Of a stretch of DNA of 64,000 nucleotides, positions 20,125 through 35,145 are shown one piece after another; position 1 is the stretch's first letter, and every line of letters begins with the position of its first letter. The stretch comes from Saccostrea echinata (Eukaryota). A program made the position numbers and the translations under genes. The stretch lies in contig NW_026889782.1 of assembly GCF_033153115.1 (NCBI RefSeq), forward strand, positions 25,110,001 through 25,174,000, written 5' to 3'. The notes beneath the pieces were generated by a model. The model made no database searches. It was given only the letters and a program-made list of their open reading frames with translations, and had not been told where the DNA came from.

Positions 20125-23021
20125 TTATTTCTCTCTTCCTTGTAGATCCCTTGAAAAGGAAACGATCCAGTAATTCTCTCTCTCTCTCTTCCTTTCTCTG
20201 ATTCTGTTTCAAACTTTAAACATACATTTTTTACATGACTTCATACATGTTTTTTTTTCCTTTCAAATACATTTTTTTCATTCTTGCTCTCTTCCGTATA
20301 GATCTGATGAAAAGGAAATGGAAACAAACCAATAACTAACTTCTGTCTCTCTTAACTTAAACTTTCATTTCTTACATTTTACAAATTCCATTTATATGAA
20401 CCTTAGTTATATGTTATATACACCCAGCTTTGAAATTGAAGAGGGTCGGTGTAAAAAAAATAATAAATTGAATTCAAAAGAAAATCCTTGTCATGATTGA
20501 AGAAGTGTGAAGTGAATTTGGGCCCAGCTTTAAAAAAGTTATACAGATAAATGGTGTTACCAAATTGTCGACGACATATTTCACAGAATACAATTTAGGA
20601 ACTCATTTATCTGTTCGTATATATGAAGATTATAAGTACTCGTTAACGTGAACACAAACAGACAGCTGACATACATTTAAGTCTTCATCAACCGATTTTA
20701 CTACGATTACTTCTCGTACAGTTCTTCAAGCGTCAAACCTTGTCCCATTGTGATTTACATTTGTAACGGGGCATATGAATCTGGAGGCCCCAGAAATAGT
20801 CATGGATTTCATATTGTTTCTCTTTCAAAGTTTTCTCCAGTTTTATTTTATACTCAGATGTGGTAAACTAATCAAGTTACACAAAAGATTACACATGATT
20901 CCTTCGGGCTATCCAAACGGATATGATCTCCATTCCCGGGATGAGATAAAACTCAGAAAAATTCTGGTCTGAGCAGCCATAGTTTTTGGTACTGGATTAC
21001 AGATGGTAACGAATGAGACCGAGAGTTATCAAGCTGCCATATTTATGCATACAGCGAGAGCGCAAAAGAAAGCACTCTAAAGGGGAAAGTCAAGAATATC
21101 ATGGAGGAGTCAAAATATGTTATTTTGTGCTTATGAATACATATATTCGGGAGAATAACTCATTATGAGATTAGAAACACTTTCAAACATCCCTCTTCCC
21201 ATATGATGGAGGTAAGGTTAGGACATGATTGATTTCACAGTATTTATGATTCTTGACATTAATCCTTCGTTTAGAATAGAAGTTTTCATGTCCAAACCAT
21301 AAGGAGACCTGAATACACAAACTACTTATTTGACAAAAATAATCCACCAAATGTGTTATCAAGTGAAGATATTAGCTTTATTAAAGCGATATTTTCTGAA
21401 TTTAGACCAATATGCCAAGTCCCCTGAATAACTTACTGACAGCGAAACATCGTCAACACTGGCGAACTCGAACGATAACACAGATCAGTTAGAGGAAGAA
21501 TCAACATCTGAATATGAAATAAACCTTTTTTTTTCTTTTTTGTACTGCGAATGACTATTAAAATAAAACTACTTAAAGAATCAACAATTGATATATTTTT
21601 TCAAAAAAGAGAGAATTTTGTAACGTGTATACGCGCACATGGGAGCTGGTAATATGTTTGTTGTGCTTAGTGTTGTGTGGCAGATCAGAGATAAACATCC
21701 AGGCAGCTTTAAGCAGTAGACAGACGTTTTGCATAAAATTTTTTAAAAAGTATTTATATTGTGATTGTACAGTATTCATTTACATTTGATTTAAAGACCT
21801 CAGTTTTCTTCATTGATTTTGTATCAATCAAGATATAATTGAACTTTCCATTCAGTCACAGATGGAGGATGGAAGGAGTTCTGTTCATGTCGTCACTGAA
21901 AGATCAGCAAAACATTCAGACGTTTTCCCCAAGTGATGGAACGCATGGTGTCTGCAAGGCGAAAGTAACCCTATCTAGGCTGTAAAAGAGATGGAAAATA
22001 AGGATGTTTTGGATTTCAAAAAGCATGCAGATGATTGCACAGGCAACAGGAACCAAGCGGAATACGGATCAAGAGTAAAATGGCATAATATTCCAGTATC
22101 AAAAGGAAGAGCCAATTCAAGATATTCTTAAAATATGAGATCAGTCAGCCAGAATATAATTCCATTGATGTGGACGAACCGGAGGTACCGAACATAGAAA
22201 CATGAAAAATTATCACCCGGAACCACTTTACTTTTTATTATATTATTCATAACATTATATTATATATATTTGAAATTTCACCTTAATAAAAGATCACAGT
22301 GAATGTGTGTAGAATGCGACACACCTTCTTCCAAAAATGCATTAATTGGTCAAGTTTTATTTTTATAGGTCTAATAGCTTTCTAGTTACATTGTATGAGC
22401 CGGACAGCATCTTAATTAAAGGTCACAGAGACCTTCTTTTAATGAGTGACACATCTTCTACCCAAGATGTATCAGCTGACAAAAAAGGTTAATAATTCTG
22501 GGACTACAGACAGAAGGGCTGATTTGAACGCCATAACAGTAATACGTTCCCTTTTATGACCGGCCTATAAAAATAAATTAAAAAGAAAGGAAAAGTCTAC
22601 AAACATACTATAGTCTGTCCCACAACCGGAACGTCACCACTTTTTGCAAGATATCTCAAAATAAATAAATACCTTGGCCTTCAACCTAGGTCCGATCGGT
22701 AGATTGATTTTTTTCCAAACTTTCTGCTTTTATACGAATCATCGAGGTCAACCAGTGTATACACACGGCGGCAAATTCAAAGTCTACGGGGATTTAACAT
22801 TGCCAAAATGGCTGCCACTTCGGAAGGGGATCCGTCATTAATTTTTATTCTTCGGAATTTTCCGTAGCCTTCCGTTAGTGACGTCATTGACGTTTCAACG
22901 CTGCGCACGTTGGCTCTATTTACGCATGCGTTACAAAAATAACGTGTTTTTGCAATTCACATAGGCTTTAAGCATTTAATTTTTAAAGAAAATAACCAAC
23001 TATCACAGCAGAATTTGCAAA

Positions 23022-26000
23022 ATGCCACGGCAGAAAAAGAACAGACAAGTTGTAAAATCACTACAGGTACATGTATAAGCATGATAACTGAGGTATAACG
23101 TTATATGTTGACAACTTTGAGCTATGCAGCTATTTTTGCAACCATGGACCTACGGTGCTAGGCTATATTCTGGAATGTCCATATAAATTCCTAGAACAAG
23201 CATTTGTGTAGAAAAAATTGACTTTACCTTATGTGAGCATACCTTGGTATAGTTAATCCAACTCAGAGGACAGGGCATTAAGCCTGTATACTTCAGAATC
23301 TCGGTATCACCAAACAGTTGCACACACATAGGCCTATAACGTTCACCCTTGTTAAATTATATCCAGTGCTATATTTCACCTCAGCCATAACTTAAACACT
23401 ATAATTGCATTCCATATTCAGAACACTCTACACACACACAAATCCATAGTTGGTAAAATATAACAGGCAACAGTTTTGAAAGTTCTAGCTGTTGTGTTGA
23501 CTGTTGTCTGCTCAAAAATGACGTCAAGAAACGACCTTGCCCTCTAAAAAGTGTGGTGTAAGGTCTATTCACACCCATGTAAATTTTACCCGTGTTATTA
23601 ATATAGGCACATAATTAGTGAGAGAGAAGTCTAAATTTAGCATACACTGTATATGGTTTCATACCTGGCCATGCCTTTTCTTTCACATTTCAATAAATTA
23701 AAAAAAAATCAAAAACCAAAAAGCACGTCTTTATTATTTTTTTTTTTATAAACAAGAAAGACAACTCTTAGATACTGAATAAAAACTAGCATCTCAATTG
23801 CTGGCAAGAGTTACTTCCCACACAAGTTAACTACTCAAGCAAAATAAACCGAGACAAACTTACCATAATGTTTCATTTTTCACAGTAAGGACAACAAATC
23901 AAAACTTATATTTTGTACAGAAGCAAAAATCTTAAATATCAAAGATGAATTTAAAAACTGAATATAGTGATGCCATGAGTTGCAAATCTATATGCATAAG
24001 CTATCTATTTTTATTGTTATAATATGTATGTTATAAATGAGGTTCAAGTAAAAGTTATATGTATATGTCAAATATGAGCCTTTCACAACTTCAAGATGAA
24101 ATTTTCATTCTTCTAAGTAATGTACATATATGTACTTGTTTAAAATTGAAATCAGGAATATTTTTCTTTTAATGCATGCAAGAAGTTGTGATTGGACAGC
24201 ATTGTTAAATTTAAAACACAGTAAGAGTGCATTATAAAACCTTGCACATTGTCTTGAAATTCATATGAAAAGGCTTATGGGTCAGGCCCGTAGGAAGCAA
24301 TTTCAGTTGGAAGGGGGGGGGGGGGGGGGCAAAGCCATACATTTTCAGATGTTTTTATTGAGGGGGCACAAGCATATAGTAGTTAATATGTTTTCTATAT
24401 ATCGGCAAAATTATACTCCCCCCCCCCCCGACCATGTAGGTTATAGTGTTCATTTAATGCACAGCTGAGTTTAGAGATTTATGATTCTCTTTTATTCTAA
24501 GTTAGATAATACATCTATATTAATAACACAGAAAATATTGCATATTTTCAAGGATCATTGTTATCATTATTCAGCTGTTGAAATAAATGATAAATCTGCT
24601 GTGTTTAGAATGAACATTGTGTCTCCTGAGGCTTTTAGGATTCCAATACTTAATGAGTTGGTAAAGCTGATATTGCCAATTAGGCAAATTTTTTTTATGG
24701 GGAAAAAAACTGTTCTTCATTGGAAAAGGGGAAGGGGAGAAAATAAACCTAAATTCATTTTAGCTCACCTGTATCGTATGAAAAGATTTGAAATTGATTT
24801 CATAGGTGTTCTGAATATCTTATAACTCAAAAGAGTTCATATAAACAAAAATAGTAGCCATAGAATGAACTTAATAAAATACATATTAAGGTGGTCTAAA
24901 ACTATTACTTTAACATTTTTTTTTATAATACATAGGTTCTTGACATTCTTAATAAGGTCTATCAGACTTTTGAGCATGAGAGCAAACAGGGAAGGGTAAA
25001 GAACATCTCTAACCCTCTGAAGAGACTTTCTACAGCAACAGGTATTAATTATCATAGAAATATTTTGTTACCGACAGATATCTGTAATAATGGACCTTTT
25101 CACAAGATATCCTGCAACTAACACCAAAAAAAATCCAATTCTGAAAAAAGAAAATCTAAGTTATTTAGATAAAACAAGAGGCCCATGGGTCATATTGCTC
25201 ATCTGAGCACTCTGTTTAGGAAAAGCAAGATTTAGTTCAGAATTGAGAAGTCTAAAAAATATATATATAGTCTCACCCTATCCCAGGGAGTAATGATTTG
25301 AAACAAACTTGCTTCTATTTCATCATAACTTAGCTGTTCCTGATAGAAGACTTCTTCCATATATACTCCCTTGTAAAACTTTTATTGTCTAATGTAGCCA
25401 TGCCATACCCCCCAGGGGTAATGATTATAATAAATTTAAATCTACACTAACTGAGGATACTTTAGAATTAATGTCCCTAATAATATCTCAGTTGTTCTTG
25501 ATAAAAAGACTGTTGAAAGATATTTCCTACATCTTCCTATGTATAACTTTAATCCCCTGTTTTGGCCCTGCCCTACTCCCAAAGGCACCATTTGATTAGA
25601 CCCTGAATCTACACTATGCAATGAAGCTTTCACACAAGTTTTGCAATGAAACTTTCACATAAGTTTCATCTCTTCTGTCCCAGAGGTTCTTAAGAAGAAT
25701 TATAAAAGATGCCACTTTATTTCCAACATTTGAAAATTATCTCCCCTTTAAAGAGAGTGGCCTTTCATGTGAACATATTTGAAATTCCTTTACCCAAGGA
25801 TGCTTTGTGGCAAGTTTGGTTGAAATTGGCTTAGTGCTTCTGGAGAAGGAGATAAATTAGTGAAATGTTTATGTTGCCGACAATAATGAAAACGACAGAC
25901 AACAGACACATTTTGATCAGAAAAGCTTTCTTAAGCCTTTGGCTAAGGTGAGCTAAAACTGTCTTGCTTCTATTGCATTAAAATGAATTGTGAGTAATTG

Positions 26001-29000
26001 TTTAGAAAAAAAGATTATTATTATATAAAGAAATGACATAGTTATCATATTTTAGATATAGTTCTCTACTTACACAATAAGTCATTTTAATAAAATTATA
26101 TAAAAAGAATATATAAAAATATATATAAAAAAAAATTGAAAACATAGTCTGTGCATTGTATCCTCTGGTACGTGAAGTACATAAATATTTTAATATATTT
26201 TAGGAATATCTGAAAGAACCCTGAAAGCAAACATCCTGGTTGATCCTGTAACAACTGTGATTGAGGATCTGCAAGTCCCTCCTGTACAGCAGAAGGTCCA
26301 CTCCAATAAGGGGCTTGATGACTTCGATGAGGACCTGGTGAAAAGGACCATCCATGAAATGCAGTTGAGGGGCGAGTATGTATCTCTTCGTCGACTGTCA
26401 GGTGTGTTGGTGGAAAGGGGAATCAGGCTCACCAAGTCATCTCTGGCAAGACTTGTGAAGAAACTTGGGTTCAGGTAAGAATCAATTAAAAAATATAACC
26501 TACAAATAAAGCATATAATTATTAAAATTGTTTAATAATATACATTTATTGACTGGGTTCGAGTGCGACAAGCATTTTGTCAGACCCACAGGGTCGACAA
26601 AATGCATTTTGCCCTTGAACCAGTCAAGAAATGTTGTTATACCTTTTATTTTATTATTATTGTCCAATATCTTGCTCCGCAGTCAAACATCGATTTTTTA
26701 CCTCACCTGCGCTGAAAGCTCAAATGAGCTTTTCTGATCACTCGTGTCCATCGTCCGTCCATCCGTCTGTAAACTTTTCACATTTTCAACTTCCTCTCAA
26801 GAACCACTAGACCAATTTTAACCAAAGTTGGTACAGAGCATTTTTGGATGAAGGGGAAGTTAACTTGTTAAAATGAAGGGCCAAGCCCCCTCAGAAGGGG
26901 AGATTATCAAGAAAAGGCAAAAATAGGGTGGGGTCATTAAAAAATCTTCTTCTCAAGAACCACTGGGCCAGAAAAGCTATAACTAATGAGGAAGCATCCT
27001 AGGGTAGTGTAGATTCTTATTCGTTAAAATCATGACCCCAAGAGGTAGGGCAGGGCCACAATAGGGAATCCAAGTTTTACAATGAAATATATAAAGAAAA
27101 ATCTTTAAAAATCTTTTTCTCAAGTACCACTGGGCCAGAAAAGCTGAAACTTATGTGGAAGTATCCTGGGATAGTGTAGATTACACATTGTTAAAATCAT
27201 GACCCCTGGGGGTGGGACGCACAGGCACTTGTTTCGTATACAGGGCACCTACTTATTTTTACTACAAGGTACCTAACTCAGTTTCAGGCACCCCCTCTTC
27301 AAGCTCGTATTTTGTTCATATATCAATCATTAACCTACTTTAAAATTATATTGTTCACTTCGAGAGACTTTTTCCTTGTCAAATAAATCCTTTCAGACAT
27401 CTCTGGTCGAGCCTCTTTATTGTAAACCACTCATTAATTACCTCGATACATTTCAAGACTTTAGATGGGACACAAATTTCCGGTTGGGGTTATAATCAAA
27501 GGATAAAACCAGAGACCTTGGAATGGAATACTTGGAAGTCTCTGGTTTTATCCTACCCCCAACCGGAAGTTGTATCCCATCTAAAGTCTTAATATCTATT
27601 GAGGGAATTTTCGAGGTACCTTGTGGTAAAAATAAGTAGGGATGCCCCGTATACGAAACAAGTGCCTGTGGTAGGACTGGGCCACAATAGGTATTACATG
27701 GGAGAAAGTCAGGTGTGAAGAACAGCAGGGCCAAACTTACTCAGGTGAGTGTTGTGGCCCATGGGTCTCTTGTTTTATGACCACTCAGTAAACATAGGAA
27801 ATGCTAGACTTATTTTAGTATAGATTTATGTAGGAACAAATTTTTAAAGGTATATAAATAAACATCGTTTGCATGCATAAAAATAGAACTGAACTTTATC
27901 TTTTTTTTAAAGAAATGTTTCATTCTCTTTCAGATTCTACAAGTCTGGTTCAGATCGGAGGTACATTGGAGAGCGTAATGACATTGTCAGTATGCGCCAT
28001 ACTTACCTGAGGTCCATCCGAAACTTTAGAGAGGCGGGTCGTCCTATCGTGTACTTGGATGAGACTTGGTTGAACACCAATCATGTAGCAAGGGGAGATT
28101 GGGTGGACTGTCCTAGGACATCTACCTCTGCCTTTGAGTCGCATCGTGGAGGTCATGGGCGCTTCGTCCCACCTGGGAAAGGCTCTCGTCTGATAATTGT
28201 GGATGCTGGTTCTTCGGCTGTGGGCATGATCCCGGGGTCATGTCTAATGTTTGAGTCGAAAACTGGCACTCATGATTATCATGATGAGATGAACTCAGGA
28301 AACTTCACGAGGTGGTTCACTGAGCAGTTGCTCCCTAACCTACCGGGTAATTCAGTCATCGTGATGGATAATGCTTCCTATCACAGTCATCTGGATCCCG
28401 AGTCTAAGTGTCCGACATCGTCGGCGCAAAAGGCCGAGATCCAGTCTTGGCTTGATAGAAAGGGTATTCATTACACTCCGGCAATGATTAAGGCTGAGTT
28501 ACTCACATTGGTGAAGCAGCATAAGCCTCGACCAAAGTATGTGATTGACGATTTGGCTTCACAGGCAGGTCACACAGTTTTGCGTCTACCTCCTTATCAT
28601 TGTGAGCTGAATCCCATCGAGCTGGTTTGGGCTGAATTGAAAAGCTTCGTCGCCAGGAGCAATACCACATTTAAGAAAGATAAAGTGATGGAGCTATTCA
28701 ATCAAGCAAGATCAGCATACGATGTGGAGAAGTGGAGGAGGGTAGAGAGCCACGTGATAAATGAGGTAGAGACAAAACTGTGGAAACTTGACGGAGTTCA
28801 GGATGATGAGGTCGCTCCGGTGATCATTGACTTGACGGACTCGGAAGACAGTGACAGTGACTTAGACACAGATTCTGGTGATGACGAAAATGACGTCGAC
28901 TCTGACGTATCCATGAACTCCGTCGAGGAATCTGATGATGAAGTCACTTGTTGCATATGTGGTGACTATAATGCTCCTGGAAGGTCTCGAAAGATTGCGT

Positions 29001-29122
29001 GGGTGGAATGTGAGTTGTGTGAAAGGTGGAGTCACCGCATATGTACCAAGCCCTCTCTAAAGTCAGGTAAGTGCCTTCGATGCTGGAACAGTTTGTATGG
29101 ACTGAATCCTCTTTCTTCATGA
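23022..29122 (+). CDS. Intact 536-aa DD83E transposase with C-terminal acidic tract and PHD finger; exons 23022-23066, 24936-25041, 26204-26474, 27934-29122
   Basis: All introns are GT-AG and phases 0/1/2 join in frame; HTH-like RLSTATGISERTLK; YLDETW, VMDNASYHS, LPPYHCELNPIE (83 aa between second D and E); C4HC3 CICG..WVECELCERWSHRIC..CLRC. Confidence 0.9.
25173..25956 (-). mobile_element. HINE (non-autonomous Helentron) in transposase intron 2
   Basis: Ends AACAAGAGGCCCATGGG... and ...GGTGAGCTAA; degenerate internal repeats. Confidence 0.8.
26545..26650. mobile_element. Short palindromic MITE
   Basis: TTGACTGGGTTCGAG..GCATTTTGTC / GACAAAATGC..CTTGAACCAGTCAA fold-back. Confidence 0.55.
26697..27774 (+). 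mobile_element. HINE in transposase intron 3
   Basis: CTCACCTG..TGAGC hairpin, GTCC microsatellite, ~150-bp repeats, 3' CAGGTGAG..GGCCCATGGG..CTTGTT. Confidence 0.82.
27220..27670. mobile_element. TIR MITE nested in the HINE (degenerate 8-bp TSD, hAT/P-like)
   Basis: ~55-bp TIR CACAGGCACTTGTTTCGTATAC...; flanks GTGGGACG / GTAGGACT. Confidence 0.8.
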
Positions 29123-29724
29123 GCCTTGCTTTGATGATTGGTGAACTGTTCCTCTTTAAAGGTAAAAGAAAGATTATTAATCATTCATTGATGCATGTAT
29201 CACCTAGTGTTTAATTATAGTTTTAAGTACTCCTATTTGAGAAAAATAAGCCATTGCAATAAACTAGGATTCAGAAAATTTTACTCTAAAATTTTGACAC
29301 TGTTGGAATGCAATTGATAATTTCATAAACAGATGAAATCCATTGATTTCAATATAACTTGGCACACAAATAGACTACACTAAGATACATAATTCTAAAT
29401 ATCGGTTTTTGATTTCAATGAAAGGTGTTGCCATGGTTACTAAAAATAAAAATTTCTGTGAAATACATTCAAAATGTACTCATCCTACAGTTTTGGTCTG
29501 ATTTCAATATAACTTAATACACAAGTAAACTACATAATTCTATTCATAGCTGTTGGAAAGTTTCAAATCCATGGGCTATTTTTCTCTTTCTTTGTTATCA
29601 GAACAAACCGGTAGAGCTACAGTCTCATCAGACATGTTTTAATGTGCACCACATCTTCTATCCGATAGTTCAGCTGACAAAATTTAATTTTTCAATTTAA
29701 TATTAAATATTGAATACTAAATAA

Positions 29725-29812
29725 TTAAGGAATTAATTTAATAGCTACCCAAATTTATATGGTATAAACAGTTTATAATGTATAAATTGGGTAGCTATTA
29801 AATTAATTCCTT
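29725..29812. repeat. Palindrome / fold-back MITE remnant
   Basis: TAAGGAATTAATTTAATAGCTACCCAA...TTGGGTAGCTATTAAATTAATTCCTTA. Confidence 0.7.
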
Positions 29813-32800
29813 ATAATTTAATTTTCATTTCATTTAGTGTAAGGAAAAAAGATTATTGCCTTGAAAATAATTCCAAATTGTACAAAATTTAAATATATAA
29901 ACGTCAGGCGGATCAATACATTTTTGACACAGTCATTGTGATGTAGGCAACCCAATTTATACAATATAAAGTAATTTTTTTATCCAATCAAATATCACGT
30001 TATATCCAGAATTAAATTACTTAAAAATGAAAAATATTTAAAGTCTCTTAGGGCAATAAAACTCTTCAATTCATTGGTGAATCTATGATACATGCATGTT
30101 TAATGATTAATTTGTCTTTCAAAAGGTGGGCCTGTGTGTAACTAATCTTTTTTATGTATCTTGCCTATATTCATGAGACTTTACCTTAATACATTGCTGT
30201 AATCACACTTTTGTCCTTTGGGTGAAATTTCAACAGTATGGATCAGCTATAACTGAAAATAAAAAGGTCATTACAGATTTGAATTCCTATTGTAGATCCA
30301 TGCAAACTTAAATCTATAGACTATATGCACATGCTTGGATATGAATTTTGTTTTACTCTGCTGTTCTATAGATCATAAATAACCATATCAAGTTAGTAAA
30401 GTGCAGAATTAAACTTTAATGAACAAGTCATAATTTCACTGCATTTGGAATGAGTTAGAACTGAAAATACACTCCTTGTACCTGTAGCTCTATTTCAGTT
30501 ATTTCAGGGTTCAAATAGAGTACAGCATATGTAAACATAATCATGATAATATACTGCCTGATTAGTTACACACAATGCCCCCTACCGAACCAACAAACCT
30601 GACTTTTGATGAGTGAAGCTGCTTCCCCTCCTCTGTATTCCATGCATGTTAAATTTTCACAGGGCAGCATTTAGTCTCAGTTCCTTATTGTGATTCACTT
30701 CTCCTCTACAATTGGGACTTGCATGATCAATATTTTTTTTTTCATTTCTTACATACACTTTGTAAAATTAATTGCAAGAAAAACTTCAAAACAAATTTCA
30801 GTGGTTTTCATTCATGAGATATATATATTGATACATAATTTATTCAATTTTTATAAAAGCCCTACTGCATTTCAAGTTTTGCTTAACTTAACAAGACCAA
30901 TTTACTGTGATAAAACCTACTGTGATATATATGCTGGGTTTTTTTTAAAACATATTATGTACATAATTATTTGCAAGAAAAACCAAATTAATTTCAGTGA
31001 TTTTAATTCATTTGTGATTTTTTTTATCATGATACATAATACTGTTTATTAAATTTAAGCTTTAATATAAAAAGCATACTGTATTTCCATTTCTGACTTA
31101 TCAGTTTACCATGTTTACTGTGATAAAATCTGCTGTGATAAATGTTATTGTTTAACTAAATATGTACATTTAAACATATGAACTGTAATAACAACAAATT
31201 AACTATAAATGGTATTGTTACTCTAAAGTGATTATTTACATTTTATTTTTTTTTCTCATTATTTTATATTTTCAATCTACTTTTTATGCACTTTGGCACT
31301 GTGATAAAAACTTTACTGTGATTATTGCTTTTATTTAATATCGAAATACTCAACAACAAACTAAGTGTCACACTTCAACCCTATAATACTCTGTATCAGT
31401 GATTGTTCTTAATCATGTTAATCTGAAACATGCATATTTGTGTTCAACTATATTTTATATATTTACATAAATATATACTGTAGTATTTTTCTCTTCTTAA
31501 ATTCTCTGTGAAAAAAAAATTTGCTGTAAATTACACCCTCTTTTTTCTAATTATCTTTTTTTTTTCTTCAAATTAACCATTGCCTTACTGCTACTTATTA
31601 ACTGACTGTAAATGCTATAGTTTCATACAGGGACATAACTTGCTTATTCAACGATTTTGTGCTCTAATTATACCATAAACAGTTGACTATGACTGTATGT
31701 TTGCATTATGGATATATCATGTAATACTTAAGGTTCTTTCAACCAAACATTGAATGTGTACAATGGTGTTGGTTTGATATGCACAACAACAAAGCTAGTC
31801 AAAAAAAAAAAAAAAAAAAAAAAATTAAACTAGCTATCAAGTTTGTAGTCTAGCATAGCAGTAACTTACTGCATGTGATAAATATATTTATAAACTAGAC
31901 TACAATAAAGTTATATATACAAATACTGAGCCCATTTCTACATGGACCCATGAATGGCATATGATTACAGTGGTAATTTTCAGTACACATTTCATTGTTG
32001 GTTTACATGATATGGAGTCACTGGCACGACAGAGATGTCTGTAAACTTCCGTCTTTGTGACATTACCAAATGCTTACATACAGGGCAAGATATTTCAGAA
32101 ATTCCCAAAATATCTTAATTTCATATTAATACATAAAGCAAGTAGTGTCTGTGATTGAAATACTATAGGAATATTTCAAATGTTTGTCTGAACTCTTTAT
32201 ATTGATTTCTTTGATAAGTATAATATGTGTTGTATTCAGTAAATCATTGTTAAATATGTTATGGGATGACACTATACAAACTTCGATCACTACAAATTTC
32301 TGAAATTTTCTTTAAAATATTTTGTTAACATGGTTAAGAAAACTAAAAATTCTGCAATGATTTTATACATGCATTTTGTGATTATTCCACACCCGATACC
32401 AAGGATATTGTGCAATATAGTAAAAAGGATTAATTGTAAAATAATATGAGTTACATGTATCAACTTATCCTGTTATGTGTGTTCATCTTATATAATATAT
32501 GTACATATTATCATGCAGATTTTCTTAAATTTGTGAAATAAATTCTTTGTTGAATTCCATACTATATTTGTTTTTCTTTCAAAGATATAATGAAGTTTCA
32601 TAATTGAAGTATGAAATCCCATATCCTTAGACAATATGCTGCATAATGCATTACTATGTGTATATGATATTGAATAGTCATATTTATTGTTATATACAGC
32701 TACTTGTTGTTTGACAAGATATGAAAAATATGGGTAAGAAAAGATACCTGTTTCAAACAAGGTGAAAGGTTATCCTGACAGTGAGGTCCATCAGAACACC

Positions 32801-35145
32801 TGTAGAAGTCTATTCACCTGCAAATACATGTATGACAATTAAAGCTTAACTTGGATTTTACGAGGCTAAACAATATGTTTGCTTCCTGTAACAGTAAACC
32901 TGGATCAACTTAAGCAATTTGCAATTTTTACACAATACTATAATGTAAATTAAACCCATTCTGTACATAGAGGTTGCATCAGCAAGCAAACACTGTTAAT
33001 GTGGGTGGCATGTGACCTGTGTCGCAGTGTGTGCACAATGAATTAAACCTTTCTAAAAATATACATGTCAAATAAGTCACAACCATTTACATTTTATAAA
33101 ATTCAATTATCATTGATCATTGTTGATTTCTATAGTATCATCATTTAGTATGTCTTCATTGACTTGGAGATTGTTTGTGAAATGTGCCGTAAGATTGCCA
33201 TATACATGATATACATGTATAGGGCATGTGCTCCATGTCTGAAATCCTCCATAAGAAAAAACAAAAAAAAAATCAGGAAAGAAATTTGAGTGCCAAAATA
33301 TTGGTATTATTAATATATAGAAAATAGCATATTGAATGCTTAGTTAGGGTATATTATTTTGACTATTTCCTGCACTGTTACTGTCAATTTATCAAATTTA
33401 TGCATAAATACAACTATATTATACATCTTTACATGTAGTGTTAAACTGTTAAAAGCGAAAGTAGACATTCTGCATAATCAACAGAATAAAGAAAATTTAA
33501 GAAATTAATTTCCAACATAAAAAGAAAGTCAGCATTGTGTTTTTAATTTTATCTTTTTTTCCTGAGTAGCTCTATACGGTCATATCAGTTCATTAAACAA
33601 TGTTAACCTGTTAACATATTAAAACTGGACGAATACATGTTGTCTATAGTAGGTCACGGGTATTTTGTCATCTACAGGGACGTGCGTGTACCATGCGTTT
33701 TGGCATATTTATCATAAAACTTGAAACACTTCTTCATTGAACATTTGTACTGCAGTAAACAACAAAAAAAACAACATTTAAAAAAAACTTACCTTTCTGA
33801 ACAAGGGATGATGTGATTTGCATCTACCTCCGGCCTAATGTGAATGATGAGTGAGTGCGTCCATAAGCTGTACTGTACTATATTCGGACTATTGACTCAT
33901 TTTTCACAATAAAACTCGCTAAAATATTTTTGAATATTATGTGTTTCTCATATTTTTACTAAAAACACGTTGAACTAATTTCTTTCATTTTAAATACATT
34001 TTTTTCATTTTTCATTTGGAAAGAACAACTACTCCCTTGATAAACTGGTTCTCCGCCCCGTAATCTAGACGATAATGGACGAGTTTACCATGTTAAATCC
34101 CCGTAGACTTTGAATTTGCCGCCGTGTGTATACACTGGTTGACCTCGATGGTTCGTATAAAAGCAGAAAGTTTGGAAAAAAATCAATCTACCGATCGGAC
34201 CTAGGTTGAAGGCCAAGGTATTTATTTATTTTGAGACATCTTGCAAAAAGTGGTGACGTTCCGGTTGTGGGACAGACTATAGTATTTCGGGACATTTTGT
34301 AGTGCTGAATTTCTGATCCCATGCTGATAATTCTTTTAAACGGAATACTTGTTTTGGCATTTTTTTTCTCTGCAATTTGAAACATATGGGCGCACTTGCG
34401 ACCTTTGGCTTCTATTGCGACGATCTATCGTATTTTCATCAATAAATCGGCAACACTCAGCAAAGATGATTCATTATAGACGTCGCCAGGTAAATGTACC
34501 CAAACGTACCACTGAGTGATTGCATAGGTCAAGATGTGGCGTTAATTGATAAAAATTCAGCGATTTTACAGCGAAAAGGAGAGAATTTTGTTGCGGTAAC
34601 AAGCTGGACACTTAATCTATGCCTTGCAAAAATGCATAAGACGTTGTTGTGAAATACAGAGCTTTTTACCCTATTTAGCAACTTTAATGGTCTCTGGCAA
34701 CAATTTTAGTTTTTCATCAGTAATCGCTTGTTGGCAATGCATTGCCTTAATTTTCTAATGTATATTTGGTAGCTTTTGAGAATTATTTTTACTGTATTTT
34801 TGTTTGCTTTCTGTAAATGCAATTATGCTTTATGACGTATATTGATGTAAGGGAGTAAAAAAATTATATTTTCCTTTCCTCCTCATAAGTGAGCAGTTTT
34901 AAGTAGAAAGGATTAACTAAGTTTGAAATCTATATATAGCATGCATTTCATTTTTGCCGGCACTGTGGCATACGGTAATATATCCTTTTCTGCTTCTCAA
35001 AATCACTAAAGAACAATAACCTAAGTGAAAACGTTTTAAACAAATACTTCAAGAAATTTTCTAATGTAGCTTAAATTAATAACTATAGACTTAAAATATA
35101 TCATAAATTATTTACCGAACAAACTGAAGTCTTATTAATTTTCAG

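What the first reader, a model, noticed from the sequence alone, without database searches (positions are those of the whole stretch)
22608..34282. Giant, potentially active, intron-containing Sailor (DD83E) transposon
Seen: 11.7 kb bounded by ~190-bp TIRs that differ at only a few positions, an intact TA TSD, and a 4-exon, 536-aa ORF with no stops or frameshifts. The ORF track shows only parts of it. The introns have absorbed two HINEs and two MITEs without breaking the gene. A probable further donor sits ~39 nt after the stop (29161/2), close enough to avoid NMD. Known: IS630/Tc1/mariner elements are usually a few kb and intron-poor, and DD~82E spacing defines the Sailor group. Inference: a large spliced Sailor lineage that is recently mobile or under selection.
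Basis: partly seen in the sequence, partly recalled or inferred. Interest (0 to 1): 0.75.

Follow-up and report, generated by a model that had tools for sequence, protein, structure and literature searches.

The report
Giant intron-bearing Sailor transposon, recently mobile
This is a real, unusually large (11.7 kb) cut-and-paste DNA transposon of the Sailor group in an oyster genome, with a four-exon transposase gene and several almost identical copies elsewhere, so it moved very recently.

Summary
The element is 22611-34279 (11,669 bp). It has 190-bp TIRs with 2 mismatches and a TA duplication at 22609-10 and 34280-81.

- **Ends:** almost all ends read TATA. Uninterrupted paralogous target sites show a single TA (8 of 8 for a sister giant copy, 1 of 1 for a non-autonomous copy). 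So only TA is duplicated, and the "TATA TSD" published for Sailor is TA plus the element's own terminal TA in this family.
- **Classification:** Sailor membership is supported by DD83E spacing, the three published signature motifs and a Tc1/mariner fold. No tree was built.
- **Gene model:** the four-exon, 536-codon model is arithmetically sound. It is supported by conserved ATG, splice sites, exon lengths and pN<<pS in a diverged subfamily, and by collinear annotated proteins of other bivalves. No RNA junction confirmed it. Contigs of three runs instead carry a junction that is GT..AG on the opposite strand.
- **Mobility:** four full copies differ by 0.15-0.66%, have unrelated flanks, and all four exons are intact in each.
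- **Scan history:** the scan flagged a sister copy before (s1-818041).

Verdict: a new variant of a known kind.

The parts
22609..22610 (.). left target-site duplication TA
   Evidence: Outer TA is intact in 94 of 94 ends. Empty paralogous sites carry a single TA.
22611..22800 (+). left terminal inverted repeat (starts TAGTCTGTCCC)
   Evidence: 2 mismatches to the right arm (22653, 22739); pairing stops after 22800.
23022..23066 (+). exon 1 (ATG, 15 codons, basic PRQKKNRQ stretch), donor GT at 23067
   Evidence: ATG, frame (with an in-frame 3-nt indel) and donor are conserved in the diverged copies C32b and C64, while the flanking sequence is not alignable.
24936..25041 (+). exon 2 (106 nt)
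   Evidence: AG/GT and length are conserved in 4 diverged copies at about 70% nt identity. The peptide is 63% identical to C. angulata P0005.
25451..25958 (.). nested high-copy interspersed repeat in intron 2
   Evidence: 5325 first-look candidates, 73-80% identity. It is related, in inverted orientation, to the repeat in intron 3 (I2/I4/I5).
26204..26474 (+). exon 3 (271 nt; helix-turn-helix part of the DNA-binding region)
   Evidence: 66% identical to P0003 and 41% to Mytilus P0010, collinear with exons 2 and 4. Weak HTH hits only.
26694..27200 (.). nested high-copy repeat in intron 3 (HINE-like; elsewhere it carries a tandem tail of about 165 bp)
   Evidence: 7551 first-look candidates, 87-90% identity over the whole length, with overlapping tandem hits.
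27220..27672 (.). nested MITE-like element in intron 3 (palindromic core 27400-27617, outer arms 27220-27274 / 27614-27672)
   Evidence: 2468 first-look candidates, matches on both strands., I3.
27934..29122 (+). exon 4: DDE catalytic domain, acidic tract, PHD finger, stop TGA 29120-22
   Evidence: Pfam DDE_3 1.1e-11. AF2 model pLDDT 75.6; best Foldseek hits are Sleeping Beauty, Mos1 and SETMAR catalytic domains at E about 1e-7.
28058..28621 (+). catalytic triad codons: D42 (28058-60), D145 (28367-69), E229 (28619-21) of the exon-4 peptide; spacing 102 / 83
   Evidence: invariant in 15 of 15. The E of NPIE aligns with LNPIE of SB100X 5cr4 (E 0.005).
28418..28537 (+). Sailor-specific insert in the D-E spacer, predicted helix - long loop - helix (SAP/LEM/HeH-like)
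   Evidence: Pfam HeH in 4 of 13 homologous spacer pieces (best 1.8e-5) and Ish1 in 4 of 13; the window's own piece gives no hit. VIA-align Z is at most 4.3, but many SAP/LEM domains are among the top 50.
28949..29083 (+). C4HC3 PHD-type zinc finger (exon-4 peptide residues 339-383)
   Evidence: Regex match. Pfam PHD E 0.019, below the cut-off. Alfin-like PHD E 0.043. Conserved in bivalve and limpet relatives, absent from the arthropod ones.
29067..30125 (+). optional intron used by the public gene model (donor inside the PHD coding part; acceptor before the mini-exon GPVCN-stop at 30126)
   Evidence: P0001 ends ...SLKSGGPVCN. The exon was found at 30126. Donor and acceptor region are conserved in C32b and C33c; the acceptor is lost in the degenerate C64.
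30548..30740 (.). conserved non-coding block 1 of the 3' region
   Evidence: About 95% conserved between subfamilies whose introns do not align. Found only inside Sailor copies, 12 candidates. No ORF and no fold signal.
31955..32094 (.). conserved non-coding block 2 of the 3' region
   Evidence: About 98% conserved; element-specific; z-scores near 0.
26500..28006 (-). stretch skipped in contigs of runs X1, X4 and X5; GT..AG on the minus strand
   Evidence: table 5 (26497>28005, cut +2, CT..AC). Minus-strand context cag|gtaagta ... tttatttgtag|.
34090..34279 (-). right terminal inverted repeat
34280..34281 (.). right target-site duplication TA

Best explanation
This is an autonomous Sailor (IS630/Tc1/mariner group) cut-and-paste DNA transposon of 11,669 bp. 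By the names on its best protein hits, the host is an oyster genome.

**Gene.** Its transposase gene has four exons.
- Exon 1 gives the start and a basic stretch.
- Exons 2-3 give the helix-turn-helix DNA-binding region.
- Exon 4 gives the DDE domain (DD83E), an acidic tract and a C-terminal PHD finger. The DDE domain carries a Sailor-specific helix-loop-helix insert.

**Mechanism.** The protein is inferred to bind the 190-bp TIRs, excise the whole unit and insert it at a TA, with a preference for Y-TA-R. It duplicates only the TA. The element itself ends in TA, which is why the ends read TATA.

**Size.** The element is large for two reasons. Its three introns (about 4.5 kb) have taken up other repeats. 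It also carries about 5 kb of 3' sequence with a few strongly conserved non-coding blocks and an optional terminal mini-exon.

**History.** The whole 11.7-kb unit, nested repeats included, transposed at least three times very recently. A family of about 5.1-kb non-coding elements with 93-94% identical TIRs is probably mobilised in trans.

**Shown:** anatomy, copies, TA duplication, purifying selection, fold.
**Inferred:** splicing in vivo, present activity, the roles of the PHD finger and the insert, and trans-mobilisation.
For: **Copies**
- Full-length copies on C86, C36 and C33 align end to end at 98.6-99.7%, and homology stops at the ends.
- Substitution divergence is 0.15-0.66%.
- All four exons, the ATG and the splice dinucleotides are intact in 4 of 4 near-identical copies.
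- The exon-4 frame is open at 6 places in the genome.

**Ends**
- 30 of 33 distinct ends read TATA+GTCTG.
- The end motif occurs 47+47 times, against 0 in the control.

**Empty sites**
- The repeat that hosts the C36 copy reads ...cacactct TA gattcacc... in 8 of 8 fetched paralogs.
- 38 of 39 paralog alignments start at query position 3.
- The paralog of the L044 site reads CCC TA GACC.

**Sailor features**
- Motifs and spacing.
- Fold.
- The LNPIE alignment to SB100X.

**Gene model**
- Exons and splice sites are conserved in copies whose introns are unalignable.
- Window against C32b gives pS/pN of 0.121/0.018 (exon 4), 0.240/0.034 (exon 3), 0.652/0.244 (exon 2) and 0.75/0.065 (exon 1). The summed dN/dS is 0.17.
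- Exon 2 and 3 peptides are collinear with annotated proteins of Crassostrea angulata and Mytilus edulis.
- In the one run that is RNA on record (X6, a relative), contigs lie on exons 3 and 4 and end at 26473 and 27929. Unique intron bins have depth 0.
Against: - None of the three predicted junctions is among the 15 joints listed for four runs; 73 further joints were not shown.
- In X1, X4 and X5, contigs run unspliced across both sides of exon 2 and across the 5' side of exon 3, and continue about 23 nt past its donor. The library kind of these runs is only guessed.
- Those three runs carry a junction (26497>28005) that removes the first 71 nt of exon 4 and is canonical only on the opposite strand.
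- No sense mRNA was shown in this species.
- No phylogeny with reference ITm families was made.
- No empty site exists for the window's own copy; its flanks have no close paralog.
- dN/dS was computed against one diverged copy only, because the script stopped before the other two.
Confidence: 0.85

Rival explanations
1. The element is structurally intact but no longer autonomous in practice. Its transcription is mainly antisense or unspliced and leads to silencing, and the recent copies were made by transposase from another subfamily or at an earlier time.
For: - The minus-strand GT..AG junction is seen in 3 runs from 2 studies, and contigs cover sense introns 1 and 2 without splicing.
- A second giant subfamily with an open exon 4 exists, at C32:7909561 and C33:33041191.
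Against: - All four exons are intact in 4 of 4 young copies.
- The TIRs of the other subfamily are only 84-86% alike.
- The kind of the runs X1, X4 and X5 is a guess, and contigs cannot show absence.
Confidence: 0.2
2. The four-exon model is wrong. The transposase is only the 376-aa ORF of the last exon, and the upstream 'exons' are chance open frames.
For: - No RNA junction was seen.
- The Sailor paper lists a 376-aa Crassostrea gigas transposase and 338-432 aa for molluscs. That is the length of the ORF 27992-29122.
Against: - A 376-aa product would lack any DNA-binding region.
- Exons 1-3 are conserved in sequence, frame, length and splice sites where the introns are not, with pN well below pS.
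- They are collinear with the N-terminal parts of annotated bivalve proteins, and with arthropod relatives in the same alignment.
Confidence: 0.05
3. The copies arose by segmental duplication, or the locus is a domesticated host gene rather than a transposon.
For: The gene has host-like architecture: introns, an optional terminal exon and conserved non-coding blocks.
Against: - Homology ends exactly at the TIR ends and the flanks are unrelated.
- TA is duplicated at sites that are uninterrupted in paralogs.
- There are 94 ends in the genome.
Confidence: 0.02
4. The 26497>28005 junction is a DNA deletion derivative present in the sampled animals, not a spliced antisense RNA.
For: - The runs X1, X4 and X5 are only guessed to be RNA, and their contigs cover sense introns.
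- Four letters fit on either side of the joint, as in microhomology deletions.
Against: - None of the 23 exon-4 matches in the assembly starts at the deletion point.
- The junction has a strong minus-strand donor (gtaagta) and a pyrimidine-rich acceptor.
- Depth is low on 22990-23789 and on the unique parts of 27390-27989. DNA of full copies would cover those stretches, although the tool warns that a hole proves nothing.
Confidence: 0.25

Closest known systems
Sailor (DD82E) superfamily of IS630/Tc1/mariner transposons (Shi et al. 2021, PMC8533490; abstract and sections 3, 4.2 read, passages found)
   Same: - DD83E spacing. The paper says DD83E is frequent in Mollusca.
- Motifs IVYLDET, VIVMDNA and HCELNPIEL.
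- Ends that read TATA followed by GT.
- Host range that includes molluscs and arthropods.
- A Crassostrea gigas founder of 376 aa, which equals the last-exon ORF here.
   Different: - Length is 11.7 kb (up to 14.8 kb in an older copy), against the published range of 1.38-6.98 kb and 2.2-2.5 kb for molluscs.
- The gene has four exons and 536 codons. The word 'intron' occurs in the paper only in its reference list.
- A C-terminal PHD finger is present. The term 'PHD' has 0 occurrences in the paper.
- Only TA is duplicated, not TATA.
- The D-E insert, for which the paper found no homology, looks SAP/LEM/HeH-like.
TLEWI, Tc1-like elements with spliceosomal introns in pteriomorph bivalves (Puzakov et al., bioRxiv 10.1101/656579; abstract read)
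   Same: An IS630/Tc1/mariner transposase gene with spliceosomal introns in bivalves.
   Different: By its abstract, TLEWI is DD36E, lacks TIRs, is low-copy and is interpreted as domesticated. This element is DD83E, has 190-bp TIRs and a TA duplication, and has multiple near-identical copies.
Tc1/mariner transposases with solved structures (Sleeping Beauty 5cr4, Mos1 3hot, SETMAR 3k9j)
   Same: RNase-H-like DDE catalytic fold (Foldseek E about 1e-7, TM about 0.65 per target), the LNPIE motif at the catalytic E and a TA target.
   Different: The D-E spacer is 83 residues instead of 34, with about 49 extra residues that form additional helices. It also has a PHD tail. Sequence identity is 13-15%.
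P element and other transposons whose transposase depends on splicing (recalled, not checked here)
   Same: The transposase can only be made from a spliced mRNA. An optional last intron changes the C-terminus.
   Different: It belongs to a different superfamily, and no tissue-specific splicing has been shown here.

Membership tests
Sailor (DD82E) | Long D-to-E spacer (DD78E-DD111E, mostly 82 or 83) | tested here: met
   D145 to E229 leaves 83 residues between them. Both are invariant in 15 of 15 aligned sequences. The three aligned arthropod relatives that lack the tail (P0049, P0114, P0105) carry a 2-residue gap and a 1-residue insertion in this spacer, which gives 82 by my count.
Sailor (DD82E) | Signature motifs I/VVYLDET, VIIMDNA, HCELNPIEL (PMC8533490 section 4.2) | tested here: met
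   The exon-4 peptide has IVYLDET, VIVMDNA (one I>V) and HCELNPIEL.
Sailor (DD82E) | Ends flanked by TATA; TIR then starts with GT or CC | tested here: met
   30 of 33 distinct ends read TATA+GTCTG. The pattern occurs 47+47 times, against 0 in the control.
Sailor (DD82E) | The four bases TATA are a 4-bp target-site duplication (as the paper interprets them) | tested here: not met
   Uninterrupted sites have one TA: 8 of 8 paralogs of the C36 site, 38 of 39 alignments from query position 3 and 1 of 1 for L044. The inner dinucleotide varies in 7 of 94 ends and the outer in 0 of 94. This bears on the paper's interpretation rather than on membership.
Sailor (DD82E) | Placement inside the monophyletic Sailor clade | not tested
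   No reference sequences were available, because the paper's supplements are closed. Indirect support only: 80-86% identical Crassostrea proteins, and the paper's 376-aa C. gigas founder.
IS630/Tc1/mariner group | DDE RNase-H-like transposase fold, TA target, TIRs | tested here: met
   Foldseek top hits 5cr4, 3hot and 3k9j; Pfam DDE_3 above its cut-off; TA duplication.
Tc1/mariner proper | DD34-41E/D spacing | tested here: not met
   The spacing is 83.
IS630 (bacterial) | NCBIfam NF033545 above its cut-off | tested here: not met
   39 bits against a cut-off of 100.
TLEWI | DD36E, no TIRs, low copy number | tested here: not met
   DD83E, 190-bp TIRs, 94 ends.
PHD finger | C4HC3 ligand pattern and Pfam PF00628 above its cut-off | tested here: inconclusive
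   The pattern is present at residues 339-383, but Pfam gives 15.4 bits against a cut-off of 24. The best solved relative is an Alfin-like PHD at E 0.043. The model has pLDDT 51-78 there.

The most novel reading that the evidence does not exclude
A still-mobile IS630/Tc1/mariner transposon has taken on the architecture of a host gene.

- Its transposase can only be made by splicing three introns, which double as a dump for other repeats.
- An optional, conserved last intron switches a chromatin-reading PHD finger on or off.
- A SAP/LEM-like DNA-binding insert sits inside the catalytic domain.
- Conserved 3' non-coding blocks and a spliced antisense RNA regulate it.

On this reading, transposition would be controlled by host splicing and aimed by chromatin state. 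The published 4-bp TATA duplication of Sailor would then be a misreading of a TA duplication plus a TA element end across the superfamily.
Probability: 0.2. Interest if true: 0.8.

Novelty: new variant of a known kind. Interest (0 to 1): 0.6.

Why it matters
- **Size and tools.** It would be the largest Sailor element described, and a rare case of an intron-bearing Tc1/mariner-group element that is demonstrably mobile rather than domesticated. An intact, very young cut-and-paste transposon of an oyster is a candidate tool for bivalve transgenesis.
- **Published transposases.** Molluscan Sailor transposases of 338-432 aa may be last-exon fragments that lack the DNA-binding region.
- **Target duplication.** The empty sites call for a re-check of the TATA duplication that is used to set Sailor apart from the other TA-duplicating families.
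- **Testable modules.** The PHD tail and the SAP/LEM-like insert give testable ideas on how target choice is made.

Tried and rejected
- **Empty site for the window's own copy.** The flanks hold only diverged dispersed repeats, at best 76% identical, that do not reach the insertion point. No empty site was found.
- **RNA check.** One search gave no listed junction of the model.
- **PDB sequence searches.**
  - The exon-4 peptide gave only weak hits.
  - The profile A1 gave SB100X at E 0.005.
  - The spacer profile A2 gave nothing meaningful.
- **Foldseek on the spacer model.** Nothing at E <= 0.001.
- **Non-coding features.**
  - Rfam on 22000-35000 gave one palindromic hit below the gathering score.
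  - Tandem repeats gave nothing relevant.
  - The conserved 3' blocks have no ORF, no fold signal and no shared words with the TIR beyond single 9-mers.
- **dN/dS.** It was obtained for window against C32b only. The scripts stopped with errors before C33c and C64.
- **Exon-4 identity profile.** The per-100-nt profile used a wrong offset and is discarded.
- **Literature.**
  - The search for a PHD finger in Tc1/mariner transposases listed 9 papers. By title and abstract start, none describes such a fusion.
  - The search for Sailor in bivalves listed 3 papers, none on this element.
  - A 2026 bivalve TE preprint has 0 occurrences of 'Sailor'.
- **What I could not see.** The supplements of PMC8533490 (Table S6, Data S2) may hold the mollusc element coordinates, the evidence for the TSD and the reference sequences needed for a tree.
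- **Joined model.** The joined 536-residue protein was never assembled, searched or folded. All searches were made exon by exon, and full-length residue numbers are not given.

Full report
**1. What is at the coordinates**

- The region holds a long inverted repeat, with arms 22592-22800 and 34090-34298 at 96% complementarity.
- Reading both ends and comparing them with other copies in the same genome shows where the shared sequence starts. It starts at TATA followed by GTCTGTCCC on the left, and ends at GGGACAGAC followed by TATA on the right.
- A whole-genome pattern search with TATA plus 26 terminal bases (up to 2 mismatches) found 47 forward and 47 reverse hits, and 0 for the reversed control.
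- In those 94 ends the outer TA is never changed, while the inner two bases differ in 7.

**2. The duplicated target is TA**

- *First site.* A non-autonomous copy (L044) has a 96-97% identical paralogous locus on another contig.
  - That locus reads ...AAACCC TA GACCTC... .
  - The left flank aligns up to CCCTA, the right flank from TAGACC, and the overlap is 2 nt.
- *Second site.* The sister giant copy on C36 sits inside a dispersed repeat with 572 first-look candidates.
  - 38 of 39 paralog alignments begin at position 3 of a query that starts with TATA.
  - 8 of 8 fetched paralogs read ...cacactct TA gattcacc... with a 2-nt overlap.
- *Consequence.* The insertion duplicates TA, and each element end carries its own TA.
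  - The window's element is therefore 22611-34279 (11,669 bp), with TA at 22609-10 and 34280-81.
  - The 188 compared TIR positions have 2 mismatches.
  - The base outside the TA is C or T in 31 of 33 ends, which points to a Y-TA-R target.
- The Sailor paper describes a 4-bp TATA duplication and TIRs starting GT or CC (PMC8533490 sections 3.3 and 4.2). In this family that reading does not hold. I could not see the paper's supplements.

**3. The gene**

- Exons are 23022-23066, 24936-25041, 26204-26474 and 27934-29122. They add up to 1611 nt, which is 536 codons plus a stop. All three introns are GT..AG and the phases are continuous.
- Searches were made exon by exon. The joined protein was not built.
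- Exon 4 hits Pfam DDE_3 (1.1e-11). It hits PHD weakly, at 0.019 and below the cut-off.
- A protein search found 2432 relatives at E <= 0.001 among 3873 candidates.
  - The best is a 422-aa 'uncharacterized protein' named for Saccostrea echinata. Its contig lengths equal those of C36 and C32 of this genome.
  - Next come Crassostrea and Mytilus proteins, then tick, beetle and aphid proteins that cover about 75% of the query.
- In an alignment of 15 sequences, D42, D145 and E229 (in NPIE) are invariant. The E of CELNP is not. This gives DD83E.
- A profile of that alignment matches Sleeping Beauty SB100X at ...LNPIE... (E 0.005).
- An AlphaFold model of the exon-4 peptide has mean pLDDT 75.6. 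Its best Foldseek matches are the Sleeping Beauty, Mos1 and SETMAR catalytic domains, at E about 1e-7.
- The motifs IVYLDET, VIVMDNA and HCELNPIEL match the Sailor consensus in the paper.
- The paper's founder from Crassostrea gigas has 376 aa. That is the length of the ORF from the first Met of exon 4 here. This suggests, without proving it, that published mollusc Sailor transposases are last-exon products.

**4. Support for splicing**

- *Direct RNA support is lacking.* I laid contigs of four runs on 22990-28989.
  - In X1, X4 and X5 (kind only guessed as RNA), contigs run unspliced through exon 2 (24418-25816). They also run from intron 2 through exon 3, to 23 nt past its donor (25802-26497).
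  - The one joint outside repeats is 26497>28005, in all three runs. With the cut shifted by 2 it is CT..AC, which is GT..AG on the minus strand. The donor is gtaagta and the acceptor is pyrimidine-rich.
  - None of the three predicted junctions is among the 15 listed joints; 73 more were not shown.
  - In X6, an RNA library on record from a relative with 4-9% differences, contigs lie only on exon 3 (26341-26473) and exon 4 (from 27929).
    - Positions 27929-33 are identical to the last five bases of exon 3.
    - One 133-nt record has 25 unplaced letters at that edge.
    - The unique intron bins have depth 0.
    - This fits a spliced mRNA but was not reported as a joint.
- *Comparative support is strong.* A second subfamily of giant copies has mostly unalignable introns and TIRs only 84-86% alike. 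These are C32b at about 13.1 kb and C33c, plus the degenerate C64 and C16.
  - Even so, it keeps the ATG, an in-frame 3-nt indel in exon 1, identical exon 2 length and all splice dinucleotides.
  - Window against C32b gives pS/pN of 0.121/0.018, 0.240/0.034, 0.652/0.244 and 0.75/0.065 for exons 4, 3, 2 and 1. The summed dN/dS is 0.17.
  - That comparison used 395, 72, 35 and 13 codons, and only this one pair was computed.
  - The exon 3 peptide is 66% identical to residues 24-112 of a C. angulata protein and 41% to a Mytilus protein. Exon 2 is 63% identical to another C. angulata model. All are collinear with exon 4.

**5. Mobility**

- Full-length copies lie on C86, C36 and elsewhere on C33. 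They align over the whole length and stop at the ends.
- Substitutions amount to 0.17%, 0.18% and 0.66% against the window, over about 11,650 aligned bases.
- All four exons are intact in 4 of 4 copies.
- The nested repeats are present in all copies. They were therefore acquired before the last rounds of transposition, and the 11.7-kb unit moves as a whole.
- The C36 copy has since gained a further 1,238 bp in intron 1.
- An older copy on C32 spans 211050-225851 (14.8 kb, 92-96% identical), and its exon 4 matches only in three overlapping pieces, which suggests frameshifts.
- Ten examined elements of 5.1-7.8 kb share only the TIRs and subterminal 230-340 bp with the giant, at 88-94% identity. 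They are 88-99% alike among themselves and have no ORF of 100 aa or more. This is a non-autonomous family, and it makes up most of the 94 ends.

**6. Why it is so large**

- Introns 2 and 3 hold dispersed repeats with 5325, 7551 and 2468 first-look candidates.
- The repeat at 26694-27200 occurs elsewhere with overlapping tandem units about 165 bp apart. This fits the Helentron-associated elements described in oysters (PMC7492417, title and abstract start only).
- The 5 kb after the stop codon is AT-rich and mostly element-specific.
- Within it, three stretches are conserved between subfamilies.
  - The acceptor region and mini-exon at 30066-30194.
  - 30548-30740, at about 95%.
  - 31955-32094, at about 98%.
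  - The last two occur only inside Sailor copies, at 12 candidates each.
  - They have no ORF and no fold signal. Their role is unexplained.

**7. The C-terminus**

- Residues 339-383 of the exon-4 peptide fit the pattern C-x2-C...C-x2-C...H-x2-C...C-x2-C.
- This tail is present in the bivalve and limpet relatives and absent from the arthropod ones.
- The public model P0001 ends ...SLKSGGPVCN. It uses a donor at 29066/7 inside the finger and an acceptor at 30125/6, which would remove the last cysteine pair.
- Donor and acceptor are conserved in C32b and C33c. A PHD-less isoform is therefore plausible, but it was not seen in RNA.

**8. The Sailor insert**

- The stretch between the second D and the E contains two confident helices separated by a long loop.
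- Pfam HeH/LEM matches 4 of 13 homologous spacer pieces (best 1.8e-5), and Ish1 also matches 4 of 13. The window's own piece matches neither.
- VIA-align against 48,161 chains gives only weak scores (best Z 4.3, MANF SAP domain, rmsd 1.7 over 40 residues).
- At least fifteen of the top 50 rows are SAP, LEM or HeH domains, among them LAP2, emerin, Hcc-1, SLX4, Tho1, PIAS1 and Ku70.
- Foldseek found nothing at E <= 0.001.
- This is a lead, not a finding. The paper reported no homology for these inserts.

**9. Comparison and verdict**

- The element is a member of Sailor by every feature I could test except a tree.
- It differs from what is described in five ways: size (published maximum 6,979 bp), introns, the PHD tail, the optional last intron, and a TA rather than TATA duplication.
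- It differs from TLEWI, the known intron-bearing Tc1-like group of bivalves. By its abstract, TLEWI is DD36E, lacks TIRs and looks domesticated.
- Another window of this scan flagged the C36 copy (s1-818041). The tail was noted separately (s1-803383).
- Overall this is a new variant of a known kind and of moderate to good interest.

Noticed in passing
window 26500-28006, minus strand: Contigs of three runs (two studies) skip this stretch. The junction is GT..AG only on the strand opposite to the transposase, with a gtaagta donor inside exon 4. It is either a spliced antisense RNA or a deletion copy. The acceptor side is not conserved in the other subfamily.
   Followed up: partly
window 30548-30740 and 31955-32094: Two non-coding blocks in the 3' region are 95-98% conserved between subfamilies whose introns do not align. 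They occur only inside Sailor copies, have no ORF and no RNA fold signal, and are absent from the non-autonomous family.
   Followed up: partly
window 28418-28537: The Sailor-specific insert between the second D and the E looks like a SAP/LEM/HeH helix-loop-helix. Pfam HeH matches 4 of 13 relatives, and many weak structural matches are to SAP and LEM domains. The window's own sequence gives no Pfam hit.
   Followed up: partly
L035-L044 (e.g. G000:C29:21706654-21711749): A family of non-coding elements with a core of about 5.1 kb has TIRs 93-94% identical to the giant's and the same TATA ends. It makes up most of the 94 ends in the genome and is presumably mobilised in trans.
   Followed up: partly
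L049+L050 (G000:C32:7902500-7918500) and L051+L052: A second giant Sailor subfamily of about 13 kb has an open exon 4. Divergence from the window copy is very uneven (exon 4 pS 0.12, exon 3 0.24, exon 2 0.65, TIR 84-86% identity). That suggests recombination or gene conversion between subfamilies.
   Followed up: partly
L031 1469-2706 (G000:C36, intron 1 of the sister copy): A further insertion of 1,238 bp lies in intron 1 of the C36 copy and is absent from the window copy at 23778. It shows that the introns are still taking up other elements. The kind of element was not determined.
   Followed up: no
window 25489-25958 and 26696-27165: Two copies of one repeat family lie in opposite orientation in introns 2 and 3, on either side of exon 3 (arms 73-83% complementary). 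Such pairs can pair in pre-mRNA.
   Followed up: no
window 29726-29813: An AT-rich palindrome scores for mir-1781 on both strands, at 41 bits against a gathering score of 68. It is probably a chance hairpin.
   Followed up: no
L035 and L037 (G000:C143:27046-32139 and C3:3917959-3923022): Two non-autonomous copies have identical flanks on different contigs. This is a duplicated or uncollapsed region of the assembly rather than two insertions.
   Followed up: no
window 22269-22579 and 34422-34591: Both flanks of the insertion contain other dispersed repeats (843 and 159 first-look candidates). The element sits in repeat-rich DNA.
   Followed up: no
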